Positions 4,578 through 29,465 of a stretch of DNA of 64,000 bases are shown here, in pieces; the first letter of the stretch is position 1, and each line of letters begins with the position of its first letter. The stretch covers positions 4,092,001-4,156,000 of the forward strand of contig JANJGN010000052.1 of the NCBI GenBank assembly GCA_026770705.1, in the 5' to 3' direction. Source of the stretch: Isurus oxyrinchus. Its lineage: Eukaryota. The notes beneath the pieces were generated by a model. That model was not told the DNA's origin and made no database searches. It was given only the letters and a program-made list of their open reading frames with translations. The translations under genes and the position numbers were made by a program.

Positions 4578-4617
4578 ATGATCGGGAAATCTTACTTCCT
4601 CCTGTCACTTCTCCAAG
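4578..4617 (+). CDS. Siglec gene A leader exon (MIGKSYFLLSLLQ, phase 1)
   Basis: Acceptor at 4534-4535, ACAATG, hydrophobic stretch, CAAG|GTAATA donor; joins V exon to give ...LLQVGLSQ/EW. Confidence 0.8.
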
Positions 4618-5599
4618 GTAATATCATCGTCAGCTTGGACAGACTTATGGCTAATAGTCTTTGTAAAAGAACATTCTTACTGAGCTCTGATAGGGAACTG
4701 ATTCAGCAGTGAGCCAGTGTACAAACTCACACCAAGTCCCATTCACCCATCACCCCTGTGCTCACTGATATACACTGACTCCCTGTCTGACAGCAGAACT
4801 GCAGGACAGCAGAGACCTCAAAGGGTTTCAGGGCTGGAGGAGGTGACAGTGATAGGGATTAGAGAGGGAGGATGGAGGGATAAGGAATCAATGAAGAGAT
4901 TTTGAAAATTGAGTCATTGCTGGACTGGGAGCCAGCGTAGGTCAGCGAGTGACAGGGGAGCAATCGGCTGAATAGAGAAGCAGGGATAAAAACTGGGGGA
5001 TGAAGTCTATCCTGATGCAAGCACTCCGATATCAATGCCCTGAAATTTTTCTCTCTTGCTGATTTTCATCAGAACTTCCCATGAAGACAACACAGAAGCT
5101 CTTAGATTAGACAGGCTGTTCAGCGTCACACTTCCTGTCCCTTCTCACCATGCTAGATACTTCAATAAGGGAGCAAGATAACTGATAGAGAGAAGGGAGG
5201 CAAAGCTGTCTGTGTGTAAAACTGTCAAATATTCCGAGTTATCATGATTGTTTCTGATCTGCTGCAGAGTTTATATTTCATTGAAACTTATCACTTTGCA
5301 GTTCAGAGAGAGACCATTGACTCACTGCCTGAAAGGCCGGTGGAAGCAGATTCAACAGGAACTTTCAGAAGGGGAACTGGATAAATACTTGAAGGGGACA
5401 TTTTGCAGGGCTGTGGGGGAGAGAGCAGAGGTGAGAGTGGGACGAATTGGACAGATCTTTCAAAGGCGCAGCACAGGCTCGATGGGCCAAATGGCTTCCT
5501 TCAGTTCTGGATCATTCTACAATCCGATAAATTAAATCTCTTATCAGTAACTCTTCAGGCTCCTGCTGCAGGAATGGATCTTTCAGAAGGGCAGGGAAC

Positions 5600-8500
5600 A
5601 AGCGGTTTCTCATATCATGTTCATATTTATTGACAATTACATAAGTGTATGGAACTGTTGAATATTTGACTCTCTAAAGTGTGGATTTAACCTTCTGGTC
5701 CACCCAGATCTTGTGCTGGTTACCTTGTCTGGAGGTGTCTTTAACTGCTCACAGTGATCTGTGGGATTGTCACCCTTGGATGTTGTTCCTGATTTCATGT
5801 GGGATCTTCTCCTCGATGAAATAGGAGCGGGAATGGATCTGATTTATCCTCGGTTCCACCTCACCGCTGTGCCCTTGTGTGTTTGACTCCATAGGCCCTT
5901 GGTTCTGAACAAATCCTTGTCACCTCGGCTGGTGGTCATGAACCTTCTGTGGGATCCTGGATGTGAACTTGTCCCAACTGTAAACTTGGCAACTCTGCAC
6001 CTCCATTTTTATCATGAACATTCCTTATCTTCTCTTGTAGTTTTAAAAGTTGCCCTCTGGTTTCTGAGAGAGTAGAATGGGTAAGAGTAGCGAAATTGGT
6101 CACTACTGGCCCACCAAACATGTTCTCTGTCAGTGATGGAATAAGGTGAGGTGATGGTGTAGTGGTATTGTTGCTAGATGAGTAATTCAGACACCCAGGG
6201 TAATGTCCTGAGAATATGGGTTCAAATCCGACCATAATAGATGATGAAATTTGAATTTAATAAAAAGATGAAATTCAAAGTCTAGTGATGACCACAAAAC
6301 CATTGTTGGAAATCCCACCTGGTTCACCAGTGCCATTTAGGGAACAAAATTGTCTGGCGGACATGTGACTCCAGACTCCACGTCAATGTGGTTGACTCTT
6401 ACATTAGGGATGGGTAATAAATCCTGGCCTGACCAGTGACTCCCACATCCCATGAATGAATTTAACAAAGTTGCAGTTGTAGGTGTCGATCTCAGATGTA
6501 ACATTGCAATGTGTGGATCTTGCTTGGTCTGTCTACATTTGAGAATTAGGGATTTCACTGTGTGAATCATTCATTCAGCTAGGCTGTTAGATCTGGGGTA
6601 ATGAGGAGAAGAAGTAGTGTGATTGATATTCCAGATTATCTGTAATCATGAACCTAGGTTCACCAAATAAACTGAAAATAGTGCTCAGAGTGTGTGCACC
6701 AGTTGTGCTCGGTGTGTTGTGCTATTTTTGAATAATGGGATATCTGGTAAAGCTGTCGACGATGACGATGAAGTCAGTGACATGGACATGAAAGGATTCA
6801 GATGTGATTTTGGACTAAGAATAGGCAGGAATTTCCTGTGGAATCAATGTTTCTTTGTGTTGACTTGGCTCATCCTCTTGACAAGCCTCGTACTTCCCTA
6901 CAACAACTTCAAGGTCATTGTTCATACCCGGCCAGGGACTGTATCTCTTGTGAGTCTCCTTGTGTGATCTGTGCCCATGTGTGAGGGATGAAGTTGTTGA
7001 AGAATATAGGATCACAAATGTGCCGGTATGATGCCCTGCCTGCCATTAAAAATGACTCCCTGGGAGATGCCTCGCTTATCTCGATGAGGTCAAGTTGAAT
7101 CAGGCCACCCTTTCAATGATATTTCCACAGTTCCTGCAGAATTTTTCACTGTTCCCTCTTGTAGCTGCTGGCATTTCTGTTGTGCTAAATGTACTGGATC
7201 AATTGACAGACTTGCATTCTCCTGCAGGTGTAATGTAGCAGCTCCCTTGAAACTGACAATACTGTTGAAACTTTCTGCATATTTCAATGTTATGTCCATG
7301 AACTGAGTTGATGGGGTAGTTTCTGCATTTGACCCATGTGAAGTCTGACAGATTCCATGCATTGTCACTAGTGTGAGGTCACTGCATGCCGGTAGACTTG
7401 CAATTGCTCAGCCTTTAGTCTCCACGATGTAGAACATCTGTGACACCCAGGAGGATTGATTGTATTTGCACCCCAGGACTATGGATTCTGCACATGGAGT
7501 TGAAGTGTTGTACACAGCAGTAGGTTTCCCCATGGCCTCCCATGTCCTTGGATACATGTCTTTGAAAATTTGCTGGGGTGGGCTGTGGGAGGGGAATGTT
7601 GGCACTTGCCCCTGTGTCAATCTTGGTCAATAAAGGGGAGGTTGCAACTTTCTCAGGGCAGAAAATTGGAATCTTGGCCAATAGTGCAGGTGATGTGACA
7701 GCATCTGTTCTCCGTGAGATTGATGGTGTAAAAGGTTTGAAATTGTTCAACAATTGTACAATACGTTGAGCACAACTGTTGCACAAACTCTAGGTTGGGG
7801 TTTTCCGGCACAGTCATGATGGGACCTGCCGTGGGAGATTGGACAAACATTGGCTTTCGGCTGGACCGGACAATCCTGGCAGTGGGTGGGGCCAGAAAAT
7901 CCCACCCCTATGGGACATTTTCAGTTTATTTGATGTGCCCAGAGAGATCTTTAAAGACAACAATCCACAATTTATTGGCAAGCCACGCCAGGATATGTGT
8001 GAGAGGTGGAATATCGATCAGCGCTCCTCGTCTCACCGTGTACATCATCGCCATTTCCTGGTTTGTCAGTCACCACATGTATATGTTCCTGATGGAATAG
8101 CGGATGGTCATTCTTATTGCTTGAAGGTTCCCCGTTGTGTAGGGTCTGTTTGGATCAGTGCACGGCTCTTTGTAGCTGCATGAGCCTTTGCTCTAGTGCC
8201 CTGCCGCTGTCAATGGCCCTTTCTGCCACAAGCCTTGCAGGATTGGTGGAAAGCTGGGCATTTCCTTGGTGCCTGCAGAAGGCCACACCTTCCACATGTC
8301 TCACTAGGTTTGGATGTTCTAGTCAGTGTGTCAACAATTGATGTTGTACTGAGGACCTGTAAGCTTCGTTGACCTGCGAGGATCACTTCGTATTTATGTC
8401 GATCCTTGAGTAGCTCTTCAATGCTATAGGTTTTGGTCTTATCTAGCAGATCTCACCACGAGGGATCCGTTTGCTCCCCAGCTCTTTACTTGAGCTCTTT

Positions 8501-8905
8501 CCCGTCACTGTGTCTTCAAAGGTTTCCTGAGCAGTCAGTACACTGCGATTTCAACCCTCTCTGATGCTGTGTCTCTGTTATGGTCTGACCAAAGCGTTGA
8601 GGGTCGTCTCATGTCATGTAGCTCGATCTCAGGCTGTTCACCACGTCATACCTGTACTGAATCTTGCTGCCAGAATGTTTGGCCACCGCTGATCACCATG
8701 TTGTGTTTTTATAATGATATAAAGGCACCAGCCACTGATACGGAATTAGGTAAATACATTGTGGATTCATTTATTTAGAATAGTGACATGAGAACAGATA
8801 CACAAGGATAGAAACTGGGAGACACCTGCAGCCAAACTGTGTGAGCTGTGTTCTGCTCACAGGCCAAAGTGAAACTTGGACTGGATGGTGTTATCATCCC
8901 AGCTG
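5600..8905 (-). mobile_element. Decayed Ty3/Gypsy LTR retrotransposon in intron of gene A, with nested SINE at about 6150-6460
   Basis: Protease KIDTGASANI (7415-7786 -), integrase WPGMNNDLEVVVGKYEACQ and KQDPHIAMLHLRSTP; PBS-like ACA|TGGTGATC at about 8692-8702. Confidence 0.8.
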
Positions 8906-8906
8906 A

Positions 8907-10118
8907 TGTTACTACTGGGCAAGTCAGATCCCAGGGTGGAGCTCAGCTTGATAGGTCCTAACTTTTATTTTTTATTTTGGAATGTGGAGTGCGGCTACTG
9001 AACAGAGTCACAGGAGTCATCTGATGAACGTCTAACAAAAGAATAAAACATTTATTAAACTAGGAAAGACAAACTATATGACATTACTCCTTCACCCAGA
9101 CCTATACCTTTACAGATACATAAGTAGAACACAAATTACGATAACTATCTTATATTCTCATGTTCACACTAAGTACACAGTCCGTGTAAACCAATAGACG
9201 ACCTGTGGTCAGGGACACAACATTCTGAAAGCAAGTGGCAGAGCCCACTTGAAACAACTTCTATGTCTCATCTGTCCCCAGACGCTTGTTACACTGTGAG
9301 CCAAACAGTCTCACTGAAAAGCTTCTTTCATATGAGAGTTTCCAATCTCCACTCTCCAAGAACTCTCTTTGGAATCTCCTCCAACATGACACTTTCACTC
9401 AGACACCTTCCACAAGGGTCCACTTTCACTATTTCAAACTCTCCTTCCCATGTTCCTGCCCCCTGGATCGCCACGTGCATTCAGCCTTCCTTCCACGCCC
9501 TGTCTCTCCAATGCTCAGCCGTGTCAATGGAACACCATGGCTTCACATGGCCGTAGTAATGAGTCACCAACCTGTGGTGTCTCCCAGGATCTTCTGGCTT
9601 CTCGCAAGCCTATTTTGCTTTAGGCCTGTGTCCTGCTGCTTTCTCCCTTTATGCTTGAAGCCTTCTTCTGCTCCTCACTCTTAACTTCACTTAACAGGGC
9701 CTTTTCCAGATTTGACTAGAAGGTTTTCTTGGGCCCTTTCTCCTGTTCCACTCGATGGTTTTGGCTTCTCCTTTACTTTGGGACTGACTATCTGTCCCGC
9801 TCCTTTGCTGCTTCTCCTGGCAACTCCTTTCAACAGAACTGAAAGTACTTTTCTGTTTTTCTCTGTCTCTGTGGGTCCTTCCCTCTGGATCACTGTTGCT
9901 AGGCAACAGCACAGTTTCTTACACCTTGTATTTGTTTTGACTTCCCTTCAACAGTCATAAAACCTCAATGGAATGCTGGCTTCTTTTAAAGTCAAATTCT
10001 ATCTTTTCAAAACACCTAAACACAAAAATACAAACTAAACTTGAACTTAAAGATAGACCTTATGCCTAACACACAAATAGACACATAGAACTGACTTAAG
10101 CCATCCGCCGTTCCTATA
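8907..10118. mobile_element. LTR-like element nested in the Gypsy LTR
   Basis: Starts TGTTA, non-coding; ends approximate. Confidence 0.4.
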
Positions 10119-10184
10119 GATCACATGACACACTTCCCCTCGAGTGATGTCATGCTGCTGTCCCTGAAAGGCATATTACAATAG

Positions 10185-10690
10185 TGTTATCACTTGGCAG
10201 GTGATGTGTGCCAGGCAGACCAAGTCCATGAGAGAAAGGTGGTCACACTATCATAATGATTTTGCAATTTGTATTTATTATGAGATGTGTGCACTGAATT
10301 CAGAAGCAATAAGTCCACCAAGAAAATTAGAGAATTAAAAAATAAATTAAAATATTTGTCATCAAAATAAAAGATTTCAAGCACATACATAAGACTACAA
10401 TGACTGTTATAATAACTCCTCGAATTCCTAATTAACCTGATCCCCAGTTACACTCATTTTAAAGCAACAGACCAAAAATAGATGTAAGATTTAAAACAAA
10501 CTCAGCAAGTTAACCCAATGCCCTGGACAGTGGAATTCCAAATGGATTTTCCCCAACTTCAGTTCTGTTGGATAGCAGGCTTGTGCACAAACAGGGTCCT
10601 GAGGACCATGAGCCAATGTAGAATGAACTAGTCCACTCCTGTGTCCAGGATTCTCTTCCATCCGTTGTGAAACCTTGGGGAGTTCCATGT
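10185..10690 (-). mobile_element. Partial LTR, inverted relative of 29757-30717
   Basis: ttttgcaatttgtatttattatgagatgtgtgcactgaattcag is the reverse complement of about 30600-30642. Confidence 0.65.
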
Positions 10691-10807
10691 GTGTCCTGTA
10701 GATGGTCCACACTGCAGCCACTGTGCCCCAGTGATGGAGGGAGTGGATATCGAGTCTAGTGGATCTACAAATTATCCAGATTTAAATATTGATATTTCTC
10801 TCCCCAG

Positions 10808-11176
10808 TTGGACTGTCACAAGAATGGGAAAGTAACACTCCACGAGAGGTGACAGCGCAGGAAGGTTCATGTGTACAGATTCCATGTCATTACAATTACC
10901 CATCACATTTGTTAGAGAAAACACGTGTCGGAATCTGGAATATGAGGAGGGACAAATGGAATACATTGTCTACAGCCTTTCACTCCAAGGATCACAGTCA
11001 CGAGTTACCACGGTTCCACCATCGGACCCGGCTGTCTGGAGACCTGAAAGATGGTGACTGTTCCCTGATTATAAACAACATCAGACGGGGAGATGCAGGA
11101 TTTTTTTTTTTCAGAATAGAATTTGACAATGGTCGGAGCCACAACTATTATCCTGTAACCCAGCTTCACGTTTCTG
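10808..11176 (+). CDS. Siglec gene A V-set exon V1
   Basis: 369 nt, phase 1-1, CCCCAG/GTAAGT; Siglec hallmarks W near the N-terminus, GSCVQIPC, GDLKDGDCSL and FFFRIE with the essential Arg. Confidence 0.93.
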
Positions 11177-11527
11177 GTAAGTGCTATGTTATAATTACTC
11201 AACAATTCACATTCAACACTCAATGGGAAATAACACAAACTGTGATGTTTACATATTAACACAAAACACAGCTTATTTTAACACATTGTCTGATTCTCAA
11301 TAACCTGGTGATGGCTTCCAGTTCAGTCCTAAAGCAACGTCTAATACTCACTTTAATATCAATGATGATGAACATTAACTGTATTATCAGGTTACCACTC
11401 CCATCAATCTCTCCTGTCCTGTTTAAAAGTCTGACGTATCGATAAAAGAAAGATGTGCATTTCTGCAGCGCAATTTACCACCTCCCTATTACAGTAATCT
11501 CCTCCTTTATCTTCATCCACGGCAACA

Positions 11528-12480
11528 TTCCCTATCTCAGGAGCCTCCTCCAGTCCCTACAACCCTCTCTATCTCAGGAGCCTCCTCCAGTCCCTACAAC
11601 CCTCCCTATCTCAGGAGCCTCCTCCAGTCCCTACAACCCTCCCTATCTCAGGAGACTCCTCCAGTCCCTACAACCCTCCTATCTCAGTACTCTCTTCCAA
11701 TCCCGAAAACCATTCCTATCACTGCAAACTCCTCCGGACCCAACACCCCTCCCTATCTCTTTAACCTCCTCAAGCCCCAATAACCCTCGCGATATTTGTT
11801 GCCTCCTCCAGTCCTAACAACCTCCCCTATCTCTGCAACCTCCTCCAGACCGAATACCTCTCCCTATCTCTGTAAGCTGGTCCATCTCTTACAACCCTTC
11901 ATATTTCTGTAACCTCCTCCAGCCCACTACAACCCTCCCTATCTCTGTAACCTCCTCCAGTCCCTAAGAGTTTCCTTTATCTCTGTAACCTCCTCCAGCC
12001 ATTATAACCCTCCCTATCTCTGTAGCCTCCCTCAGCCCCAGCCACACTCCATATCTATGTAACCTCGTCCTGCCCTTACAACCCTCCCTATCTCTGTAAC
12101 CCCATCCTGCCCCAAAAACTCCCCCATCTCTGTAAACTCCTCCAGTCCCTGCAACCTTCCCTACCTCTGAAACCTCCACCAGCCTTTCCAAGCCTCCCTA
12201 CCTCTGCAATCCGTCCAGCCCCTACAACTCTTCCTATCCCTGTAAACTCCTCCAGACCCTAAAACCCTCTCTGCCCTTGCAGCCTCCTCCAGTCCCTACA
12301 CGCTCCCCATCTCCATAAACTCCTCAAATCCCTACAGCCCTCCCTATCTCTGCAACCTCCTCCAGGTCCTACCACCCTCCCTCTCTGCGTAACCTCCTCC
12401 AGTATCTACAGCCCTCCCTATCTCTGTTACCTCCTACAGCCCCCACAAACCTCCCTATCAGTGTAACCTCCTCCAGCCCC
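11528..12480. repeat. 37-bp minisatellite (ccctccctatctctgtaacctcctccagcccctacaa), degenerate
   Basis: Directly visible. Confidence 0.92.
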
Positions 12481-12555
12481 TGATGGAAGGTGGGTCGAGC
12501 GGGTCAGTCACTTGCATGTTTATTCTGCAGCTTTAATATTTTAAGATGGTAAGAA

Positions 12556-13290
12556 TGTAGGAACATAAGAAATAGGGACAGGAGCAGGCCATTCGGCCCC
12601 TCAAGCCTGCTCTCACTGATCTGGTTGTGGCCTTAACTCCATTCTCCTGCCTGTCCCCCAAACCCTTGACTCCCTTGTCGATCAAAAACCTGCCTCACTC
12701 AGCCTTGAGTCTATTCAATGGCCCAGCCTCCACTGCTCTCTGGGGAAGAGAATTCCACAGGCTAGCGCCCCTCTGAGAGAGGAAATTCCTCCTCATCTCA
12801 GTCTTAAATGGGAGAGGCCTCATTCCGAAACTGTGCTCCCTGGTTCTAGATTCCCCCACGAGGGGGAAACATCCTCCCAGCATCCACCCTGTCAAGCCCC
12901 CTCGGAATCGGATATGTTTCAATAAGGTCACCCCTCATTCTTCTAAACTCCAATGGATACAGGCCCAACCTGCTCAACATTTCCTCACAGGACAAACCCT
13001 TTAATCCCAGGAATCAGCCCAGTGAAGCTTCTCTGAACTGCCTGTACACAATGATCCTGTTACAATCTCACTAACGCCCTGTGCAGCTGTTGCAAGACTT
13101 CCCTCCTTTTATACTCCATCCCTTTGCAATAAAGGCCAACATTCCACTTGCCTTCCTCATTCCGTGGTGTTCCTGAATGCTGACTTTCTGTGATTCATGT
13201 ACAAGGACACCCAGATCCCTCTGTACTGCATTCTGCATCCTGTCTCCATTTAAATAATATCCTGTTTTTCTATTCTTCCTGCCAAAATAA
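12556..13290 (-). mobile_element. CR1 LINE 3' fragment
   Basis: VQRDLGVLVHESQK and FKTEMRRNFLSQR...LWNSLPQRAVEA; duplicated at 48760-49490. Confidence 0.88.
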
Positions 13291-13406
13291 TTTGTTGCCA
13301 TTCTCCTCAGTATTGACCATCCCCCCAATTCAGCCTCATCAGTAAATTTTGAGTCTAGTGGATCCACAAACCATCCAGAGTTAAATATTAATATTTCTCT
13401 CCCCAG

Positions 13407-13775
13407 CTGAACCCTCACAAGAGTGGAAAGGTGACACTCCACGAGAGGTGACAGCGCAGCAAGATTCGTGTGTACTGATTCCGTGTCATTACAGTTATCC
13501 ATCGTGTCTGGAAAACCAACCGCGAGGTGGAGTCTGGTTTAATAATGAGGAACAGATTTCCTGGGCTCCCATTGCCTTTCACTCCAAGGATCACAGTCAC
13601 GAGTTACCACGGTTCCGCCATCGGACCCGGCTGTCTGGAGACCTGAAAGATGGTGACTGTTCCCTGATTATAAACAACATCAGACGGGAAGATGCAGGAC
13701 CTTATTTTTTCAGAATAGAATTTGACAATGGTCCGAGCCATAACTATTACCCTGTAACCCAGCTTCACGTTTCTG
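13407..13775 (+). CDS. Siglec gene A V-set exon V2
   Basis: 369 nt, phase 1-1, open; AEPSQEWKGDTPREV...DSCVLIPC...GDCSL...DAGPYFFRIE. Confidence 0.93.
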
Positions 13776-14588
13776 GTAAGTGCTGTGTTATAATTACTCA
13801 ACAATTCACATTCAACACTCAATGGGAAATAACGCAAACTGTGACGTTTACATATTAACACAAAACACAGCTTATTATAACACGCTGTCTGATTCTCAAT
13901 AACCTGCTAATAGCTTCCAGTTCAGTCCTAAAACAACCTCTAATACTCACTTTAATATCAATGATTAAATGTATTGACTGTGTCCATCAATGTTATCAGG
14001 TTATCCACTTACATCAATCTCCCTAATCCTGTTTAAAATTCTTACATATCAACAAATGAAAGATTTGCATTTCTATAGCGCCTTTCAACACCTCTGGACG
14101 TCGCAAATGGATTCACAACCATTGAAATAATTGTTGAAATGTAGCCCTTGTTGTAATATAGGAAACACAGCAGCCAACATGTGCACAGGAAGCTCCCAGA
14201 AACAGCAATGTGATCAATAACCTGATCATCTGCTTTAAATGCCGGTTCAGTGATTGGTTCAAATGGATTCTCTCCTGGTGGCGACAGGATAGAATTTAAA
14301 TCTGGCAGATTTCAGAGAAAGTAACAAGCCAGTGTGTCAGGAACTGTGAGCTGCTCCCCCGCCCTCACCTGGGATTGTCAATTCAATTGTCTCAAAGTGG
14401 AAGTGAATTCATCTGAGAGACAGAAATTCCACTAAGTCTGAAAATAGGAAATTCTCTCCTGATCATTGTAACCTCTCAGATCTGATATCATCCTTGTAAA
14501 ATTGCTTTCTCTTGTGGGACTGTGCTTTCTATTTAAACTGATGCTTCATGTTATATTTCTCTAAAAGGATCCATTCTCCGTCTGTTAG

Positions 14589-14885
14589 ATTTCACAGATA
14601 AACCCACGATATTCCCTGCTGAAATTATTGCAGGAAAGCGTGTGGATGTAAGCTGCACCTTCAACACAACGTGCAATGGAACAGCAGCACCTGTCTTAAC
14701 CTGGGACACTCCCACTGACGTACCTGGATCAGTCTCAAACACTGTAACTCAGCATGGTGTCACTCTGACCTATACTTCTGTTCTGACCCTGATCCCATCA
14801 CTCAAACACCACGGACACACTCTCAGCTGCAGAGTGAGATATCCATCTGTTTCATCGGAGCTGACCCTTATGCTAACTGTAAAAT
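14589..14885 (+). CDS. Siglec gene A Ig domain following V (C2-1)
   Basis: 297 nt, phase 1-1; DKPTIFP...VSCTFNTTC...LTW...HHGHTLSCRV, including the extra Cys for the V-C2 interdomain bond. Confidence 0.93.
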
Positions 14886-15254
14886 GTAAGTATGGATTCC
14901 CTTCATTCTATATTAGCTGTAATAGGATACAATGTGCAGAGCAAGATCCCAAAAACATCACTTGAAGACAAAACAGGTCCTTTTTTATTAGTGATATTGA
15001 CCAGGGAGAGCTCTTCCTGTATTGAGCCTTGGGATTGTTTGTGCCTACCTGATAGGGCAGAGGGGGCCAAGGTTGAACTTAAAAGACAATATAGGATAAT
15101 ATAAATATTGTCTTCATTGATGTCAAAGATTTTGGGGGAGATGTAGTATAAAAGTTTAATATTAACAATGTAAATAGATAGTATTTATCATCAGTTACTC
15201 AAGGTCACATGAGAATAGAACACGGAGAGAGATAGTTCTCTTGATACCTAGGTA

Positions 15255-18430: not shown

Positions 18431-18519
18431 GTGGGGGGTGTTCGTGACCATCAGTGTGGAAGGGTTAGGTTTACAGGTTACACAGACCACACACGCACCA
18501 ACAGACACACACACACATG

Positions 18520-18985
18520 NNNNNNNNNNNNNNNNNNNNNNNNNNNNNNNNNNNNNNNNNNNNNNNNNNNNNNNNNNNNNNNNNNNNNNNNNNNNNNNNN
18601 NNNNNNNNNNNNNNNNNNNNNNNNNNNNNNNNNNNNNNNNNNNNNNNNNNNNNNNNNNNNNNNNNNNNNNNNNNNNNNNNNNNNNCATGCACANNNNNNN
18701 NNNNNNNNNNNNNNNNNNNNNNNNNNNNNNNNNNNNNNNNNNNNNNNNNNNNNNNNNNNNNNNNNNNNNNNNNNNNNNNNNNNNNNNNNNNNNNNNNNNN
18801 NNNNNNNNNNNNNNNNNNNNNNNNNNNNNNNNNNNNNNNNNNNNNNNNNNNNNNNNNNNNNNNNNNNNNNNNNNNNNNNNNNNNNNNNNNNNNNNNNNNN
18901 NNNNNNNNNNNNNNNNNNNNNNNNNNNNNNNNNNNNNNNNNNNNNNNNNNNNNNNNNNNNNNNNNNNNNNNNNNNNNNNNNNNNN
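18520..18985. other. N-runs (also 33690-34246, 34985-35123, 35417-35687)
   Basis: Unknown bases, often flanked by CA/TG microsatellite; content cannot be assessed. Confidence 0.99.
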
Positions 18986-19139
18986 TCAGTGCTGCACTGG
19001 AGTCTCGGTGTCAGCTCCGATTCTGTGCTGAAGGAAGGTAAACTCCAGATCAACAAGACCCTGAATTGGATGAGCAAAATCCTTAACAGAGAATTGTAGA
19101 TTTACCCCTCAGTGCTCCATCGATTAAATATAATTCATT

Positions 19140-19389: not shown

Positions 19390-19659
19390 AATATAATTCA
19401 TTGCCTGTCAAGCCCTTGGGGACATCCTGAGGATGTGAAAGGGAGTTTCTTTAAATCTGGATGGGCAGGGTCTCTGGTGGGAGAATGCTCCTGCAGTGTG
19501 ACAGTTTACATAGGCAGTGCCCATTGTAAATGTGACATAGGAACTTATCTTGAGAGAAGGTGCCTAGAAATGCACACAGGCATCAGATACAGAGACATGA
19601 TGCATGGAGTCTTGCTGTGCACAGTGCTTGCTCACATTAAACACTTGATTTGTTCTTAG

Positions 19660-19941
19660 ATGCTCCACAGAATCTCTCATTTACTTCTCTTGATATGATT
19701 AACGCTTCATCGATCAATATAATTGAGGGGAATTCTGCAGTGATAATCTGCTCTGTCGAGAGCTTCCCAGCTTCTAACCTGACGTGGCGACATCTTAATG
19801 TCCCAATGAACAGAACAAGTTCCAACAATGAGCTGTGGTTGGTGATTCCTCACCTTACATCCAGGGACACTGGAGACTATCAGTGTGTGGCAGAGAATGA
19901 ACATGGAGCAGTGGAGGGGTTCATAACCATCACTGTGGAAT
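19660..19941 (+). CDS. Siglec gene A C2-2 exon
   Basis: 282 nt, phase 1-1; YAPQNL...EGNSAVIICSVESFPASNLTW...DTGDYQCVAENEHG. Confidence 0.93.
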
Positions 19942-19984
19942 GTGAGTGTGGAGATACATTTGTTTGTTTGTTGTCTCCGTGGTC

Positions 19985-20268
19985 TCCGTGGAGCCATTGG
20001 GATCGTGTTGTTTTTAATCCAGTTTTCTTCAATCCTCACTCAGTCCACGTTATCCACACACCCAATTTTTCCTCTCTCTTTCTGTTTTTGCTCTCAGTTT
20101 CTCCTTCAATGGTTGTCAGGACAAGGCTGTCAGGTCTTCGTTTCCAATCTCCGTACTTGACGACCTTTCTCTCTCTAACTGTCCTGAACAACCCTTTTAA
20201 TTGCTGAACGTCTCCTCTTGATCTCAGCCACTCATTGGTCTTTCTGTCCATCCAGCTGATTCTGAGCA
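19985..20268 (-). mobile_element. RTE-like LINE 3' fragment
   Basis: MLRISWMDRKTNEW and a TTIEG...RKR C-terminal motif. Confidence 0.55.
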
Positions 20269-20269
20269 T

Positions 20270-21480: not shown

Positions 21481-21811
21481 GATACACAATCTCCAACTCT
21501 TTCTCAACCATTAAGATGCTCCTTAAAACCATTAAGACACACCGTTAAAACCTCCTGCTTTCAGCGAGCTTTTGCTCACCTCTCCTAATATCTCCTAATG
21601 TGACTCGGGGTCAGATTTTGTCCGAAGGAGGTGAGAAATGATGGAGGGAATTCCAGAGGTTAGGGTCCAGGCAGCTTAAGGCACGGCCGCCAATGGTGGA
21701 GAGATGGGAATGGGAGAATGTGCAAGGGGTCGGAATTGGAGGAGCACAGAGATTTCGGAGAGCTGTGGGGTGTGGGGATTATCTGCTGATTGTTCTCTGT
21801 CTTTGTTCCAG

Positions 21812-22087
21812 ATCCCCCACAGGAGACGATGGTGTCCATCAGCAGATCCTCAGGTGGGATAAGAGTGGGAAGCAATATCACATTAACCTGCTCCAGTGAA
21901 AGTGTCCCACCGATATCTCATTACACCTGGTTCAGGATCGAGGGGAACACCAGCACCCAGTTAAACACAAGTAGCCGCACTCTCTCCTTCACTCCTGTAA
22001 CACGGGAGAATGATGCAGGTTTCTACTGCACAGCGAGGAACCCGGTGGGTAACAGCACCTCCAACATCACCCACCTGAACGTACAAT
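21812..22087 (+). CDS. Siglec gene A C2-3 exon
   Basis: 276 nt, phase 1-1; YPPQET...GSNITLTCSSESVPPISHYTWFR...DAGFYCTARNPVG. Confidence 0.93.
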
Positions 22088-22429
22088 GTAAGCATTTTAC
22101 TCCCCCTGTCTCTGCTTAAAACTCAAACACTTTCTGTCTGAGGGCAGCTTCCTTGCTGTTGTTTAGCATAACTAGCATCACCTCCCTGCTTTTTTCACCC
22201 TGCGCCTCTCCGAGATACATAAGGAGATATCAGAACAGGGACTGAAAGCTCAGAGAAAGAGGCCAGATTTTAAGGAGTGTCTGAAATGAGGAGAGAGATA
22301 GACATGGAGAGGTTTACGGTGGGAATTCTAGAGCTCGGGGCCCAGGCAGCTGAAGGCACGGCCGCCAATGGTGGAGCGATAGGAATCGGGGGATGGTCAA
22401 GAGGCCGGAATTGGAGGAACGCAGAGACC

Positions 22430-22810
22430 TCGGAGGGATGTAGATGCTGGAGGAGGTTACAGAGATAGGGAGGGTTGTGGGGTCTGGAGGAGGTTACAGA
22501 GATAGGGAGGGTTGTGATGGCTGGAGGAGGTAACAGAGATAGGGAGGGTTATAGGGGCTGGAGGAGGTAACAGAGATAGGGAGGGTTGTGATGGCTGGAG
22601 GAGGTAACAGAGATAGGGAGGGTTATAGGGGCTGGAGGAGGTAACAGAGATAGGGAGGGTTGTAGATGCTGGAGGAGGTAACAGAGATAGGGAGGGTTGT
22701 GGGGTCTGGAGGAGGTTACAGAGATAGGGAGGGTTGAAGGGGCTGGAGGAGGTTACAGAGATAGGGAGGGTTGTAGATGCTGGAGGAGGTAACAGAGATA
22801 GGGAGGGAGT
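22430..22810. repeat. 37-bp minisatellite, G-rich orientation
   Basis: Directly visible; also at 44080-44460. Confidence 0.93.
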
Positions 22811-23117
22811 AAGGAGGAATTTGAAACGATGTAAATTTTAAAATTGTGGCATTGTCGGACCGGGAGCCAGTGTAGCTCAGTGACCAACAGGGAGTGATGT
22901 GTGAACGGGACTCGGTGTGAGTTAGGACATGGGGACAGCAGAGTTTGGGATGAGCTGATGTTTCCGGAGAGTGGAAGATGGGAGGTCAGGCAGGAGAGTG
23001 TTGGGATAGTCGAGTGCGGAGGTAACAAAGGCAGGAATGAGTGTTTCAGTGTTAAGATTCTATCTTACGCTCTAACTTTGCTATGACGTTGTCTCATTGT
23101 TGTCCTTCCCTCCTCAG

Positions 23118-23411
23118 ATAAGCCGGAGATTTCCCAGCAGTCGGAGTGCACTCGGAGGTCAGAGGGGGTCACCTGCGTCTGTGTGGCCAACTCCAACCCA
23201 CCCGGAGACCTCACCTGGCACCTGCCCAGTGCCAACATCAGTGGTAACCAAAAAAACGGAGGTTTTGTGTCGTGGCAGGTCAGAGATGGGCATCTGGTGA
23301 CTGGTTCCCTCACCCTGATGAGACCCCAGGATGAGGGGGGAGTGATGGCATCCTGCTCGGTTCAAAACCCACACGGGGAAGCCATGTTCAAGATGTATCT
23401 GTGGGTCAAAG
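23118..23411 (+). CDS. Siglec gene A membrane-proximal C2-4 exon (MAG domain-5-like)
   Basis: 294 nt, phase 1-1; YKPEISQQSECTRRSEGVTCVCVANSNPP...HLPSANIS...VTGSLTL...ASCSVQNPHG, with the C...CxC...SNP pattern of MAG/CD33-related proximal domains. Confidence 0.92.
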
Positions 23412-24295
23412 GTGAGAGACTCGCTCAGGATCGATCTCCACTCAGCTGGATTGATCCCTAAACTCGAGAATTCCCTCCCTCAACCTCTCCACCTCTCTCT
23501 CTACCTCCTCTAAGATGCTGTGTACAACTTCCCCCTTTGACCAAGCTTTGAATCACCTGACCTCATGTGACAATGGCAACACTTGGTCAACTTGGAGCCA
23601 GGCCGTTCAGGGGGTGATGTCAGGAAGCACTTCTTCACACAAAGGGGAGTGGAAATCTGGAACCCTCTCCCCCAGATAAGCTGCTTCATTGGGTGCAAGA
23701 CAGAAAGCTTTGACAAAATGTCCTTTCTCAGCAATACTCAGGTTCTCCTCCCAAACGATAAAATATTATATATAAACATTTCATAGATTACATCGAGAAA
23801 CATTTTATATAAATGTTACATAGATTACATTGATAAATATTATATATAAATGTTACATAGATTACGTTGAGAAACGCAACAGCTGATTTGTGCAGAGCAA
23901 GATCCCACAAATAACAGTGTGAGGATGAGGTGATAAATGATTATTTTAGTGATGTTAGTTGATACATATATATAGAAATTAAAGATATAATTACACATTT
24001 AGTGAGGGAAACCTGTCCATTTTAACAGGTCTGGGTGTATATGTGACTCCAGTCTCAGACACCATCATGGTTAACTCTTACCTGCCCTCTGAACTGCTCT
24101 CCCAGTTTGGGACCAACCAGTGGTTCAGGAGGAAGACCCCCCACCACCTTCTCAAGGGGAAACTAGGGATGGACAATAAATGTCAGCATTGCCCGAGAAT
24201 GAGTATTTAAACACTGAGTGAGTGTATCGCTTCTCGAGATACATCGGAGCATCATTGTAAACCTGTAGTGCAGTAATTAATGGCTGTTTTTACAG

Positions 24296-24392
24296 GTAGA
24301 GACTCCAGTAAATGGACAGTAGGATTGTTCACGGCTGGGATCATGTTGAGTGTTTTCCTGGCTGGAATCTTCATCTTCATCTGTGTGAGAAA
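24296..24392 (+). CDS. Siglec gene A transmembrane exon (GRDSSKWTVGLFTAGIMLSVFLAGIFIFICVRK), uncharged
   Basis: TTTTACAG acceptor, AA|GTAAGT donor, phase 1 to 2. Confidence 0.9.
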
Positions 24393-24509
24393 GTAAGTCT
24401 GAAGATTTAACTTGATTTTAATATAAACATTTGTTTAGGATTAATTGGACAGTTTTTACAAAGGGCCAGCACAGGCACGATGGGCTGAGTGGCTTCCTCC
24501 CGAGCTGTG

Positions 24510-24975
24510 AGATTTTAAATTCTTTCATCGAATGTGACTGTCACTGGCGTGGCCAATACTAATTGCCCATTCCCTAAATGCCCCTTGAGAATGAGGTGGT
24601 GAGCTGCCTTCTTGACCCGCTGCAGTCCATGTGGTGTAGGTACACCCACAGTGCTGTTAGAGAGGGAGCTCCAGGATTTTGACCCAGCGACAGTGAAGGA
24701 ACGGTGATATATTTCCAAGTCAGGATGGTGAGTGACTTGGAGGGGAACTTCCAGGTGGTGGTGTTCCCATGTGTCTGCTGCCCTTGTCCTTCTAGATGGT
24801 AGAGGTCGTGGGTTTGGAAGGTGCTGTTGAAGGAGCCTTGCTGAGTTGCTGCAGTGCATCTTGTATATGTTACACACACTGCTGCCACTGTGTGTTCGTT
24901 GTGGAGGGAGTGAATGTTTAATGTGGTGGATGGGGTGTAGATCAATCGAGCTGCTTTGTCCTGGATGGTGTCGAG
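24510..24975 (-). mobile_element. LINE 3' fragment (copy at 27050-27510, part of the cassette duplication)
   Basis: CNIYKMHCSNSARLLQQHLPNPRPLP...SFTVAGSKSW; same family as 31370-31745. Confidence 0.8.
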
Positions 24976-25115
24976 ATTCTAGATTCTGTGCTTTGTGCAG
25001 AAGTGATTTAAAGAGACAGTCCAGTCATTGGTGTAAGGTTACAGTGGGCTCTGTGTCTGTGCTGCACTGACTCTTTGCTATGTGATAACCACAGTGTGAT
25101 ATTGTGTTATTGCAG

Positions 25116-25197
25116 GAGAAAGACAGCGATGGAGGAGAGAGTTTCAGGGACCAGTGACATTGCATTGACCCCCAGTTCACTCTCTGTGAAGCACCAG
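25116..25197 (+). CDS. Gene A cytoplasmic exon 1, cassette a (RKTAMEERVSGTSDIALTPSSLSVKHQ)
   Basis: TGCAG acceptor, CAG|GTACAG donor, 82 nt, phase 2 to 0. Confidence 0.82.
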
Positions 25198-25717
25198 GTA
25201 CAGGAGCTGTTTACACTCACTCCAAAGCTTCAATCTCAGTGTGTAGACAACACATGTCCCAGATTCCCTGCCCAGTTACCCACTGATTTGTACCTGTGGA
25301 GTCAGCAATGGTTCAGTATCATGCTGTCTCTCTGTTATGACACAGCAACTGGTAAAGGCTGTTGTTTAAAAACCCAGAGGGAAACTTTAAACAACTGTCA
25401 TAACCTATATTTCCCAGTGGAATGTTTGAGATGCATCTCTAAATTCAGGAATAAGACCACCAGTTCTGGAGATGGGTTTATATCAAACTAAATGAGACAT
25501 ATATTAATTTACACAAGTTAAACATATGCACATGGTTACAAACTAGTATTATCATAACTTTTTAACAAATTCTCAAACTAATCTCCTCTAAGACAACCCA
25601 TAGTCTTTAAGCAGATTCCAGGCATTTTCACCTCACAAGTTCCAGTTTCTCTCTCTATCTCAACCTCCCTTTCTTTCTCTCTCTTTCTCTCTCTCTCATC
25701 CTCTCTCTGATTACAAG

Positions 25718-25795
25718 GTGCATGTTAATGAGCTTCACACCAGAAACTTGAGTGAAGAATCCAAGCCGTCACTCACCAGAGCCATTACCGAGAGA
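25718..25795 (+). CDS. Gene A possible cytoplasmic exon 2, cassette a (VHVNELHTRNLSEESKPSLTRAITER)
   Basis: Pyrimidine tract + AAG acceptor, 78 nt, phase 0-0; weak donor GTGCGA. Confidence 0.45.
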
Positions 25796-25802
25796 GTGCG
25801 AG

Positions 25803-26105
25803 ACTGACAGCGGGTCAGTACTGAGGGAGTGCTGCACAGTCGGAGGGTCAGTACTGAGGGAGAGTTGCACCGTCGGAGGGTCAGTACTGAGGAAGCGCTG
25901 TACTGTCGGAGGGTCAGTACTGAGGGAGCGCTGCACCATCGGAGGGTCAGTACTGAGGGAGCGCTGCACTGTCAGAGGGTCAGTACTGAGGTTTTTGCTG
26001 CGCTGTCGGAGGGTCAGTACTGAGGGAGTGCGAGACTGACAGAGGGTCACTATTGAGGATGTGCTGCACTGTTGGAGGGTCAGTCCTGAGGGAGCACTGC
26101 ACTGC
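25803..26105. repeat. 33-bp minisatellite (gagggtcagtactgagggagtgctgcactgtcg)
   Basis: Directly visible; also at 28930-29097, 38007-38326, 54700-55212, 61070-61302 and 62995-63268. Confidence 0.93.
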
Positions 26106-26249
26106 CATAGGTGGTTTCTTTCATAAGACATGGGAGAGAGAGTTAAACCCACTGAGACACGACTGACATTAACGAAGCTGCACAATAATTTAACCCTATC
26201 AGTGCCAGTAAATGATGTGAGGATGTCTTCTGTTTCCATTTCTCTGTAG

Positions 26250-26498
26250 GGTAAACAGAACGTGCTGATTACTGAGCCCCGGAACACAACCAGAGACACA
26301 ACTAACGAGGGGGAGACCCCAACTCCCCGGGGTCTCTCTGAAGGTGCAGTGGGAGGCGATGCTGGACTTGGGAACCCCGGCAAACCTGAAGAGTTTCTCT
26401 ACGCCAATCCCCAAGTTTTGAGGGTGTCCAGTGGTGATGGGTCTGTCCACAGGGAAGAGGAGACGGAATACGCACAGATCAGGTTTGAGCATAACTGA
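26250..26498 (+). CDS. Gene A terminal exon, cassette a (...FLYANPQV...TEYAQIRFEHN*)
   Basis: CTGTAG acceptor, phase 0, 249 nt; ITSM-like TEYAQI with a degenerate proximal ITIM; AATAAA at 27023-27028. Confidence 0.85.
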   Translation, partial: GKQNVLITEPRNTTRDTTNEGETPTPRGLSEGAVGGDAGLGNPGKPEEFLYANPQVLRVSSGDGSVHREEETEYAQIRFEHN

Positions 26499-27645
26499 AT
26501 GAGAAATGGGGACTGGGAGTGAGGAGGAGTGGGCGTGGGGGTAGGGATTGAGATTCCTGGGAACAGGAAACAACCCACTGGGGGAGAGGGGGAGAGAGGG
26601 AGGAAGGGATGGAATTGGGCTACGGTTGGTGTGGTTTGGAATGAAATGCTTCTCCAGAGAGGACTGGATGCTGAGCCATTGGGGAGTGAGATTCACTGTC
26701 TCTCTCTCTCTCTCTCTCTTCCTCTCTGTCTCTCTCTTTCTTTCTGTGTCAGTCTCTCATTCTCTCTCTCTTGCTCCTCCTTTAAGATGACCGTTAATGA
26801 CTGACTTTGATGACTCAGCTGTTGGTCTCCTGTCCCTAATATCTCCTCATGTGCCTCAGAGTCAGGTGAAATGTGACTAACAATCCCCGGATGAGCCTTG
26901 GGACATTTTGCTACATTGAAGGTGCTATATAAATGCAAGTTGTTGCAGTAACTCTGATCTGCTTCTATTAACAATGGAACCACAGAGGTTCCTTCGACAG
27001 GGCGTGTGTGCAGCAGGGTCACAATAAATACATTGAGCTGTGAGATTTTTCATTCTTACATCGAATGTGGCTGTCACTGGTGATGTCCGCATTGATGCCA
27101 ATCTCTAACTGCCCTTGAGAAGGTGGTGGTGAGCTGCCTTCTTGACCCGCTACAGTGCATGTGGTGTAGGTACACCCACAGTGCTGTTAGAGAGGGAATT
27201 CCAGGATTTTGACCCAGCGACAGTGAAGGAACGGTGATATATTTCCAAGTCAGGATGGTGAGTGACTTGGAGGGGAACTTCCAGGTGGTGGTGTTCCCAT
27301 GTGTCTGCTGTCCTTGTCCTTCTAGATGGTAGAGGTCGCGTATTTGGAAGGTGCTGTTGAAGGAGCCTTGCTGAGTTGCTGCAGTGCATCTTGTAGATGG
27401 TACACACACTGCTGCCACTGTGTGTTCATGGTGGAGGGAGTGAATGTTTAATGTGGTGGATGTGGTATGGATCAATCGGGCTGCTTTGTCCTGGATGGTG
27501 TCGAGCGTCTTGATTCTGTGCTTTGTGCAGAGGTGATTTAAAGAGAGAGTCCAGTCATTGGTGTAAGGTTACAGTGGGCTCTGTGTCTGTGCTGCACTGA
27601 CTCTCTGCTATATGATAACCACAGTGTGATATTTTGTGATTGCAG

Positions 27646-27727
27646 GAGAAAGACAGCGATGGAGGAGAGAGTTTCAGGGACCAGTGACATTGCATTGACC
27701 CCCAGTCCACTCCCTGTGAAACACCAG
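27646..27727 (+). CDS. Gene A cytoplasmic exon 1, cassette b
   Basis: Near-identical to 25116-25197 with splice sites intact. Confidence 0.8.
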
Positions 27728-28842
27728 GTACAGGAGCTGTTTACACTCACTCCAAAGCTTCAATCTCAGTGTGTAGACATCATATGTCCCAGATTCCCAG
27801 CCCAGTTACCCACTGATTTGTACCTGTGGAGTCAGCAATGGTTCAGTATCATGCTGTCTCTCTGTTATGACACAGCAACTGGTAAGGGCTGTTGTTTAAA
27901 ATCCCAGAGGGAAACTTTAAACAACTGTCGTAACCTATATTTCCCAGTGAAATGTTTGAGATGCAGCTCTAAATTCAGGAATAAGACCACCAGTTCTCAA
28001 GATGATTTTATATCAATCTAAATGAGACATTTATTAATTTTCACAAGTTAAACATATGCACATGGCTACAAACTAGTATTATCATAACTTTATAACAAAT
28101 TCTCAAACTAATCTCCTCCAAGACAACCCATAGACTTTAAGCAGACACCAGGCAAAGCATTTTCACCTCACAAATTCCAAATGAGGCTCCTTTCACTTTG
28201 GTTCCTTTGCAGACAAGTGTAGGATTACAGCTGCTTTGCTGTTACAAGCCTCTGCTCTGCACACACAAAACTGCACAAGTTATACCCAGCTCTTGAGTGT
28301 GAAGAAGATGGAGATTGATGGGCTCTTGATTGGTAAAGGGATCAATGGTTAGGAGAGAAGGTGGGAGAATGGGGTTTGTGAAACATATCAGCCATGTATG
28401 AATGGTGGAGCAGACTCGATGGACCGAATGGTCTAATTTCTCCTCCTATGTCTTATGGTCTTATGGCTTCTGTTTGAAGGTAAATTCGCAATGTATCATC
28501 AGGACCTTTGAACTCCATCTCTTCCAATCCCCTTTCATCGTATCAATTTTATTAGTAATATAAACGTTGATTGGTTTAAGATTTCAATCTCAGACTTTGA
28601 ATGTTTTATTTAAAAATACAAATTACCACTTTACCTCTTTGTTTACATCTCAAAACTACTATACATCAAAGCACACAGACTGGCTGTCTTTAATCCAATT
28701 TAAATACACACAGACACACACACAGACTAAACCTCTGTTTAAAAAGACAGTTTGCATTTATAATACAAACATTAATAGATTAATAACACTCTGTCTCTAT
28801 CCCTCCTCTATCTCTCTCTCTCATCCTCTCTCTGATTACAAG

Positions 28843-28920
28843 GTTCATGTTATTGAGCCTCACACCAGGCACCTGAGTGCAGAATCCAAGCCGTCACTCA
28901 CCAGAGCCATTACCGGGGGA
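28843..28920 (+). CDS. Gene A possible cytoplasmic exon 2, cassette b (VHVIEPHTRHLSAESKPSLTRAITGG)
   Basis: 78 nt, phase 0-0, donor GTGGGG. Confidence 0.5.
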
Positions 28921-29216
28921 GTGGGGGACTGACAGCGGGTCAGTACTGAAGGAGTGCTGCACTGTCGGAGGGTCAGTACTGAGGGAGTGCTGCACTGACA
29001 GAGGGTCAGTACTGAGGGAGCGCTGTATTGTCGGAGGGTCAGCACTGAGGGAGTGCTGCACTGTTGGAGGGTCAGTACTGAGGGAGTGCTGCACTGCCAT
29101 AGGTGGTGCCTTTTATCCGATAGGAGAGAGAGAATTAAACAAGTCTGCACAATAATTTAACCCTATCAGTACCAGTAAATGATGTGAGGATGTCTTCTGT
29201 TTCCATTTCTCTGTAG

Positions 29217-29465
29217 GATGAACAGAACGTGCTGATTACTGAGCCCCGGAACACAACCAGAGACACAACTAGTGAGGGGGAGACCCCAGCTCCCCGGGAT
29301 CTCTCTGAAGGTCCAGTGGGAGGCGATGTTGGACATGGGAACTCAGACAAACCTCACGAGCTTCTCTATGCCAACATCAACTTTTCAAAGCTGCCCGGCG
29401 GTGACAGGACTGTGCACAGGAGCGAGGACACGGAATACGCACAGATCAGGTTCCAGAAAAACTGA
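29217..29465 (+). CDS. Gene A terminal exon, cassette b (...LLYANINF...TEYAQIRFQKN*)
   Basis: 249 nt, phase 0; ITIM LLYANI plus ITSM-like TEYAQI, the CD33-related Siglec tail layout. Confidence 0.88.
   Translation, partial: DEQNVLITEPRNTTRDTTSEGETPAPRDLSEGPVGGDVGHGNSDKPHELLYANINFSKLPGGDRTVHRSEDTEYAQIRFQKN

What the first reader, a model, noticed from the sequence alone, without database searches (positions are those of the whole stretch)
4578..29465. Modular Siglec with two V-set exons and two tail cassettes, a possible combinatorial receptor
Seen: one leader, two intact phase 1-1 V exons, one shared C2x4-TM trunk and two intact cytoplasmic cassettes. All phases are compatible, so V1, V2 or V1+V2 could join tail a or tail b (about 687 aa with one V and 810 aa with both, if the 78-nt exon is used). 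Known: most Siglecs have one V-set domain; Siglec-12 is the two-V exception. Inference: one gene may vary ligand specificity and signalling independently by splicing.
Basis: partly seen in the sequence, partly recalled or inferred. Interest (0 to 1): 0.8.

Follow-up and report, generated by a model that had tools for sequence, protein, structure and literature searches.

The report
Shark Siglec gene with doubled modules
A shark immune-receptor gene of the sialic-acid-binding Siglec family really has two sugar-binding exons and two signalling-tail cassettes, but they look built to be used one after the other, not as either/or choices, and automatic annotation already predicts this layout in related sharks.

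Summary
One leader (4578-4617), two intact phase-1 V-set exons (10808-11176, 13407-13775), four C2 exons, an uncharged TM exon and two intact tail cassettes form one open gene with canonical splice sites. The assembly gap lies in the C2_1/C2_2 intron, among retroelement-like sequence, and touches no exon.

Both V exons are Siglec-type and keep the sialic-acid arginine. They differ mainly in the C-C' region.

The "choose one V, choose one tail" reading is only partly supported:
- RNA-derived contigs of the same or a sister species show a V-exon 3' end spliced onto the V2 start. This is serial use.
- The closest RefSeq models (great white and basking shark) carry V1-V2 in tandem. One great white isoform skips V1.
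- The best-matching great white model joins tail a to tail b in series, through a donor inside the last a exon that ends 16 nt before the end of a's stop codon. The same donor is in frame here, giving an 889-aa ORF.

I could not lay reads on the tails, so tail usage in this genome is untested. Multi-V Siglec models are already in RefSeq for several sharks and rays, and this scan has noted the layout elsewhere in this genome. I found no paper describing it.

The parts
4578..4617 (+). Leader exon (start codon, 13 codons plus 1 base); the only leader in the window
   Evidence: The same 13-residue leader is found in great white and basking shark Siglec models.
10808..11176 (+). V1: first V-set exon, phase 1-1, intact. 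Keeps the canonical Arg and has three Cys.
   Evidence: Pfam V-set 2.5e-11 and Ig_CD22. Best PDB matches are Siglec-5, sialoadhesin, MAG and CD33, with the Arg aligned. It groups with first-position V domains of great white two-V models. RNA-derived contigs lie on it.
11523..12481 (.). 37-bp minisatellite in the V1-V2 intron. The same array precedes the V exon of the paralogue at 47113-48540.
13407..13775 (+). V2: second V-set exon, phase 1-1, intact. Keeps the canonical Arg and has a fourth Cys that is typical of V domains following another V.
   Evidence: Three RNA-derived contigs of X1 carry an 11-letter V-exon 3' end directly before the V2 start.
14589..14885 (+). C2_1 exon (C2-set_2)
   Evidence: The GT..AG joint 13775^14589 is seen in X1, X2 and X5 but not in the DNA run X16.
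18520..18985 (.). Two assembly gaps, inside the C2_1/C2_2 intron, among retroelement-like sequence
19660..19941 (+). C2_2 exon (Ig_3 / I-set)
21812..22087 (+). C2_3 exon
   Evidence: 97% identical to great white P0261.
23118..23411 (+). C2_4 exon
24296..24392 (+). Transmembrane exon with no charged residue in the span
25116..25197 (+). Tail a, first exon (82 nt)
26250..26498 (+). Tail a, last exon. The proximal Tyr motif has Pro at +3, so it is not an ITIM, though YxN is kept. The distal motif is TEYAQI. The stop codon is at 26496-26498. An internal donor CAG|GT follows 26482.
   Evidence: Great white and basking shark models use this donor.
26507..27034 (.). Spacer specific to copy a, with no counterpart after copy b. 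It carries the only AATAAA after tail a (27023).
27646..27727 (+). Tail b, first exon (82 nt)
29217..29465 (+). Tail b, last exon. It has a proximal ITIM (LLYANI) and a distal TEYAQI, with the stop codon at 29463-29465. It is followed by sequence shared with the paralogue (29491-29663 matches 54213-54381).
25718..25795 (+). Open and AG/GT-flanked, but unsupported.
   Evidence: Absent from all 280 fetched relatives' protein models.

Best explanation
This is a real, probably functional, inhibitory Siglec-type receptor gene of a lamniform-like shark. It contains two old internal tandem duplications.

Shown: exon integrity, Siglec-type V domains that keep the arginine, an uncharged TM, the ITIM/ITSM content of the tails, a V-to-V2 splice in RNA-derived contigs, and serial V-V and tail-tail models in the nearest species.

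Inferred: the duplicated modules are mainly used in series.
- The main product carries V1-V2 as a two-headed lectin end on four C2 domains. The two heads differ in the C-C' region, so they likely differ in glycan fine specificity.
- The tail can be lengthened by splicing from a donor inside the last a exon (last exon base 26482, 16 nt before the end of a's stop codon) to the first exon of cassette b. This gives four tyrosine motifs: YxN-only, ITSM-like, ITIM and ITSM-like.
- Exon skipping (V1, or the a cassette) probably yields shorter isoforms.
- Termination in a alone is less likely, because a did not inherit the shared 3' flank.
For: Gene structure and ORFs.

Siglec identity.

RNA-derived contigs:
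- The joint 13775^14589 (GT..AG) is present in X1, X2 and X5 and absent from the DNA run X16.
- Three X1 contigs start 11 letters before the V2 start. Those letters match the last letters of a V exon and match neither the intron nor the leader.
- Contigs lie on V1, V2 and C2_1.

Relatives:
- The seven best hits to V2 have 2-4 V-sets.
- Great white P0161 reads L-V1-V2-C2_1-C2_4-TM-tail a, and P0260 is the same minus V1.
- P0261, the best match of the window's C2_3, TM and both tails (89-97% across these), reads C2x4-TM-a-b. Seven lamniform models have two tail cassettes in series, and three of them have the a-then-b order.

In the window:
- The same donor (CAG|GTTTGA, with G at +5) is in phase with the 27646 acceptor, and the serial ORF is intact at 889 aa.
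- The b copy has CAG|GTTCCA, without G at +5.
- Homology between the two tail units ends 8 nt after the stop codon. Only b is followed by sequence shared with the paralogue.

Position-specific features:
- V1 groups with first-position V domains and V2 with later-position ones.
- An extra Cys occurs in 23 of 28 later-position V domains and 1 of 24 first-position ones. The Arg is kept in 81 of 86 V domains.
Against: - No reads were laid on the tail region, so a-b, a-only and b-only use are untested in this genome.
- The RefSeq models are automatic predictions from other species, and I could not see the evidence behind them.
- The V-to-V2 overhang is only 11 letters. The contigs come from a run whose RNA nature is guessed, from the same or a sister species, and could stem from a paralogue with a V2-type start.
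- The V-to-C2_1 joint cannot tell V1 from V2, because their last 25 nt are identical.
- X1 contigs over V2 carry three letters typical of the paralogue.
- The internal donor is not a strong consensus site.
- dN/dS between the two last tail exons is about 1.1, so constraint on both is not shown.
- The Cys correlation is shared by kin, so the cases are not independent.
Confidence: 0.55

Rival explanations
1. One reading: V1, V2 or V1+V2 is freely combined with tail a or tail b by alternative splicing, so ligand specificity and signalling vary independently.
For: All the phases allow it. The V acceptors and donors are identical in context, so neither is obviously weaker. The great white locus XP_041037226-30 has V1+V2 and V2-only isoforms. 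Paralogues end in a-type or b-type tails alone.
Against: No V1-only or leader-to-V2 junction was seen; all three contigs ending at the V2 start carry a V 3' end. The closest models of the tail region use a and b together. Cassette a lacks the shared 3' flank. Nothing links the V choice to the tail choice.
Confidence: 0.2
2. One copy of each pair is a silent relic. For example, V1 or cassette a is skipped in nearly all transcripts, and the gene makes an ordinary one-V, one-tail Siglec.
For: dN/dS is near 1 between the last tail exons and 0.7 between the V exons. The proximal ITIM is lost in a. In X2, little lies on the V1-specific part, though contig depth cannot rank parts of a gene.
Against: Both copies keep their ORFs, splice sites, Arg and Cys pattern. 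Orthologous V1-type and a-type modules are intact, and are included in models, in great white and basking shark. Contigs lie on V1 in X1 at exon-like rather than intron-like level, and a V-to-V2 junction exists.
Confidence: 0.15
3. The duplicates are assembly artefacts (uncollapsed haplotypes or a false tandem duplication).
For: There is a gap elsewhere in the gene, and the locus is repeat-rich.
Against: The copies differ by 7-18%, with a central V segment only about 45% alike. That is far beyond allelic difference. No gap lies between or beside the copies. Contigs of an independent DNA run cover all 30 bins of 10500-15000. The same V1/V2 and a/b order recurs in protein models from other species' assemblies.
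Confidence: 0.03

Closest known systems
RefSeq models of great white shark (Carcharodon carcharias): XP_041037239 (P0261), XP_041037234 (P0172), XP_041037226-30 (P0161, P0258, P0260)
   Same: Same leader. V1-type then V2-type heads. Exon-level identity is 84-97% between the window and these models. Tail a is joined to tail b at the same position. One isoform lacks V1.
   Different: They are automatic predictions in another species. No single model there combines two V, four C2 and both tails, as the window's exons would allow. The window's species is not among the proteins fetched (best identities 87-98%).
Primate Siglec-12 (Siglec-XII)
   Same: A Siglec with two V-set domains in one chain (PMC6288428) and an inhibitory-type tail (the tail is from my own knowledge).
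   Different: The shark duplication is most likely independent. It is part of a family-wide 2-7 V layout in sharks and rays. Both shark heads keep the Arg. NCBI's name 'Siglec-12' for the shark models is automatic, not orthology.
CD33-related inhibitory Siglecs (Siglec-5, -7, CD33)
   Same: They are the best structural-sequence matches of both V exons, with the Arg aligned. Tail b has a proximal ITIM and a distal ITIM-like/ITSM motif, which is the arrangement of these receptors (own knowledge).
   Different: Sialoadhesin and MAG score almost as well, so subfamily orthology is open. Differences here are the two heads, four C2 domains and a duplicated tail cassette.
CD22 (Siglec-2)
   Same: Pfam Ig_CD22 matches both V exons. 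A long tail with several tyrosine motifs, including a YxN type, would resemble the serial a+b tail (own knowledge).
   Different: CD22 scores much lower than the CD33-type Siglecs in PDB. Its tail is not built from a repeated two-exon cassette.

Membership tests
Siglec (I-type sialic-acid lectin) | N-terminal V-set Ig domain of Siglec type | tested here: met
   Both V exons match Pfam V-set (about 3e-11) and Ig_CD22 above their cut-offs. The top PDB hits are all Siglecs.
Siglec (I-type sialic-acid lectin) | Conserved F-strand arginine and A-strand aromatic residue that contact sialic acid | tested here: met
   The Arg of FRIE aligns with the Arg of Siglec-5 and sialoadhesin. The Trp of QEW aligns with the N-terminal Trp of sialoadhesin. 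The Arg is kept in 81 of 86 related V domains.
Siglec (I-type sialic-acid lectin) | Cysteine pattern: an intrasheet pair plus an extra Cys for a bond to the next domain | tested here: met
   V1 has 3 Cys, V2 has 4 and C2_1 has 3, at the expected places. The bonds themselves are not testable with these tools.
Siglec (I-type sialic-acid lectin) | Binds sialylated glycans | not testable with these tools
   Needs recombinant protein and glycan arrays.
CD33-related inhibitory Siglecs | Uncharged TM, with a proximal ITIM plus a distal ITIM-like motif in the tail | tested here: met
   The TM has no charged residue. Tail b has LLYANI and TEYAQI. Tail a has only TEYAQI plus a YxN motif with Pro at +3.
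CD33-related inhibitory Siglecs | Orthology to the mammalian CD33-related cluster | tested here: inconclusive
   Siglec-5, CD33 and Siglec-7 score best, but sialoadhesin and MAG are within two orders of magnitude in E-value. I made no tree with mammalian Siglecs.
Two-V-set Siglec (Siglec-12 type architecture) | Two V-set domains in one transcript or polypeptide | tested here: met
   Three RNA-derived contigs join a V 3' end to the V2 start. The caveats are the 11-letter overhang and a possible paralogue origin. V1-V2 models exist in great white and basking shark.
Mutually exclusive cassette splicing | Only one member of each duplicated exon set is ever included | tested here: not met
   For the V exons, the V-to-V2 junction and the tandem models contradict exclusivity. 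For the tails, the relatives' models include both cassettes. RNA over the tails of this genome was not tested.

The most novel reading that the evidence does not exclude
The gene is a splicing-tuned receptor. Including or skipping V1 switches between a hetero-bivalent head and a single lectin head. Using or ignoring the donor inside the last a exon switches between two tails: a short one without an ITIM (YxN plus ITSM-like) and a long four-tyrosine one that adds a true ITIM. One locus would then set both glycan specificity and inhibitory strength. The fourth cysteine of V2 would bond to the otherwise unpaired cysteine of V1, copying the V-C2 disulfide of Siglecs.
Probability: 0.2. Interest if true: 0.65.

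Novelty: new variant of a known kind. Interest (0 to 1): 0.45.

Why it matters
Siglecs are studied almost only in mammals, where one V-set head and one tail is the rule. A large shark family with stacked, arginine-bearing heads and repeatable tail cassettes would show two things. Modular growth of both ends of the receptor is old. CD33-type tail logic (ITIM plus ITIM-like motif) also exists in cartilaginous fish.

This locus gives concrete, testable junctions (11176^13407, 4617^13407, 26482^27646, 24392^27646) and a testable disulfide. The value is limited because RefSeq already predicts such models in related sharks and rays, and because this scan has met the same layout elsewhere in this genome.

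Tried and rejected
- Searching for spliced transcript ORFs of this species with the V2 exon in the word-indexed protein search gave only three short RefSeq proteins from other sharks.
- The look-up of encoding contigs, which I wanted for the great white and basking shark loci to see whether both cassettes and both V exons lie in one gene there, was closed.
- Read laying allows one call of at most 6,000 letters.
- Contig depth cannot rank V1 against V2, so I did not use it.
Exons were searched one by one, and joined ORFs were only checked for frame and length inside scripts.
- A second leader for V2 was searched for with up to 5 mismatches in 13 residues in all six frames. None was found.
- I considered structure prediction of a V1-V2 model and dropped it, because the tool returns no coordinates and so could not test the proposed disulfide.
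- Literature searches for shark, elasmobranch or cartilaginous-fish Siglecs found no description of multi-V Siglecs.
Full report
**The gap.** The window has N runs at 18520-18685 and 18694-18985, and three more beyond 33 kb. The two runs inside the finding lie in the intron between the first and second C2 exons. They follow a CA-rich stretch and sit among retroelement-like open frames. The only Pfam support is a weak integrase-core match below the cut-off. The exons on both sides are phase 1-1. The great white shark model P0261 joins the same two exons directly. So the gap does not bear on any exon the finding names. It could still hide an extra C2 exon, since paralogues carry up to five C2_2-type repeats. 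I did not fill the Ns.

On the + strand every element has canonical AG/GT sites:
- a 40-nt leader (4578-4617);
- two 369-nt V exons (10808-11176 and 13407-13775) with identical acceptor and donor contexts;
- four C2 exons (14589-14885, 19660-19941, 21812-22087, 23118-23411);
- a 97-nt TM exon (24296-24392);
- two tail cassettes of two exons each (25116-25197 plus 26250-26498, and 27646-27727 plus 29217-29465).

The leader is unique in the 64 kb, even allowing 5 mismatches in 13 residues in six frames.

First, the small tail exon is 82 nt, so using both small exons back to back breaks the frame. It appears in none of the 280 relatives' models I collected. Third, without it the ORFs are 661 aa with one V and 784 aa with both.

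**What the domains are.**
- Both V exons match Pfam V-set and Ig_CD22 above threshold.
- Their best solved relatives are Siglec-5, CD33, Siglec-7, sialoadhesin and MAG. The arginine of FRIE aligns with the sialic-acid arginine, and the Trp of QEW aligns with sialoadhesin's N-terminal Trp.
- The TM span has no charged residue.
- Tail b has a proximal ITIM (LLYANI) and a distal TEYAQI.
- Tail a keeps TEYAQI, but its proximal motif has Pro at +3, so it is not an ITIM although YxN remains.

This is an inhibitory Siglec-type receptor.

**The duplications are real and old.**
- The V units are 85.6% alike over 749 bp. The tail units are 93.5% alike over 1149 bp and 82% in the last exon. That is far beyond allelic difference, and no gap lies between the copies.
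- Within the V exon the divergence is mosaic. dS is 0.32 in codons 1-30, about 1.4 in codons 31-56 (the C-C' region) and 0.05 in codons 57-122. This pattern suggests gene conversion around an old, distinct centre.
- A 5'-truncated, frameshifted paralogue at 48.8-51.6 kb is 95% identical to the V2/C2_1 unit and 88% to V1. So the V1/V2 split predates that gene copy.
- In a quick tree of 86 V domains, V1 groups with first-position V domains of great white two-V models (SH-aLRT 88). V2 sits among later-position domains.
- Homology between the tail units ends 8 nt after the stop codon. Only copy b is followed by sequence shared with the paralogue. Copy a is followed by a 528-bp private spacer with one AATAAA at 27023.

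**RNA evidence.** I had one read-laying run and used it on 10500-15000, with three runs guessed to be RNA and one DNA run. All of them are Logan contigs.
- The GT..AG joint 13775^14589 is present in X1, X2 and X5 and absent from the DNA run. These runs therefore contain spliced RNA, and a V exon is joined to C2_1.
- The last 25 nt of V1 and V2 are identical, so this joint does not say which V was used.
- Three X1 contigs begin 11 letters before the V2 start. Those letters are exactly the end of a V exon, and are neither the intron nor the leader. This is a V-to-V2 splice, meaning serial use.
- Contigs lie on V1, V2 and C2_1.

Caveats apply. The runs are from the same or a sister species, with 2-4% differences in the introns. 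X1 contigs over V2 carry three letters typical of the paralogue. Paralogues with a V2-type start exist. Many rows of the output were not shown. No leader-to-V2 junction appeared among the rows that were shown.

**Relatives.**
- A search of the representative library with the V2 exon gave seven top hits that all have 2-4 V-set stretches.
- These are RefSeq models from small-spotted and cloudy catsharks, starry smooth-hound, basking shark and a stingray (Atlantic stingray, Hypanus sabinus), plus a deposited GenBank model from the brownbanded bamboo shark. Several are named 'Siglec-12' automatically.
- The nearest species are great white and basking shark, with exon identities of 87-98%.
- Great white XP_041037226-30 is one locus. 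Its isoforms read L-V1-V2-C2_1-C2_4-TM-tail a, the same minus V1, and one using an internal V1 acceptor.
- Great white XP_041037239 (P0261) is the best match of the window's C2_3, TM and both tails. It reads C2_1 to C2_4, TM, cassette a, cassette b. The last a exon is cut just after the distal tyrosine motif and joined to the first b exon.
- Seven lamniform models have two cassettes in series, and three of them have the a-then-b order.
- The window has the same donor (CAG|GTTTGA after 26482, with G at +5). It is in phase with the 27646 acceptor, and the serial ORF is intact at 889 aa. The b copy has lost the G at +5.

**A position-specific feature.** V domains that follow another V carry a fourth cysteine in 23 of 28 cases. 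First-position V domains carry it in 1 of 24 cases. The arginine is kept in 81 of 86 V domains. With V1+V2+C2_1 the cysteine count is even (10), and with V2+C2_1 alone it is odd (7). I infer that this cysteine may pair with the otherwise unpaired inter-domain cysteine of V1. These cases are related to each other, so the counts are not independent, and the bond is untested.

**Reading.** The most likely picture, at about 0.55, is a two-headed inhibitory Siglec whose duplicated modules are mainly used in series, with some exon skipping. Silent relic exons (0.15) fit the near-neutral dN/dS of the tails but not the conserved inclusion in relatives. An assembly artefact is very unlikely (0.03).

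**Novelty.** I found no paper on multi-V Siglecs in sharks. PMC6288428 mentions two V-sets only for Siglec-12. Automatic annotation already predicts multi-V and double-tail models in related species. This scan has already noted the layout on other DNA of this genome, for example a seven-V gene. I file it as a new variant of a known kind, of moderate interest.

**Limits.**

Noticed in passing
window 48762-51564 (+): A paralogous Siglec fragment that is 95% identical to 12558-14917. Its V exon (about 49611-49978) has a 1-nt deletion that shifts the frame. It has no leader, and the same 37-bp minisatellite lies upstream (47113-48540). It is probably a headless pseudogene.
   Followed up: partly
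window 40934-41236 (+): A divergent, orphan V-set-like open frame (Pfam V-set E 6e-5, below cut-off). It stops before the F-strand arginine. Its start resembles the fourth V of a basking shark four-V model (P0277).
   Followed up: no
window 11523-12481, 22430-22810, 44066-44445, 47113-48540, 63322-64000: A 37-bp minisatellite family occurs in both orientations, always in or beside Siglec-like units. A separate 33-bp minisatellite lies in both tail introns (25786-26114, 28896-29103) and inverted at 38007-38326.
   Followed up: no
window 13975-14470: One X1 contig skips 494 bp with non-canonical ends (GA..GT). It is probably an insertion/deletion difference in the V2/C2_1 intron of the run's organism, not a splice.
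   Followed up: no
window 13550, 13559, 13654: All X1 contigs over V2 carry the letters of the paralogue at these three sites but, in the rows shown, not at its other differences. This suggests gene conversion or allelic mosaicism between V2 and the paralogue's V.
   Followed up: partly
proteins P0174, P0176, P0274 (great white shark): V1-V2-C2_1 ectodomains joined to a TM that contains an arginine and to a very short tail. These are activating-type partners of the inhibitory two-V genes.
   Followed up: no
window 30561-31202 (+): A reverse-transcriptase open frame (RVT_1, E 4e-10) about 1.1 kb downstream of tail b. The only AATAAA signals after tail b (30542, 30624) lie at its start.
   Followed up: no
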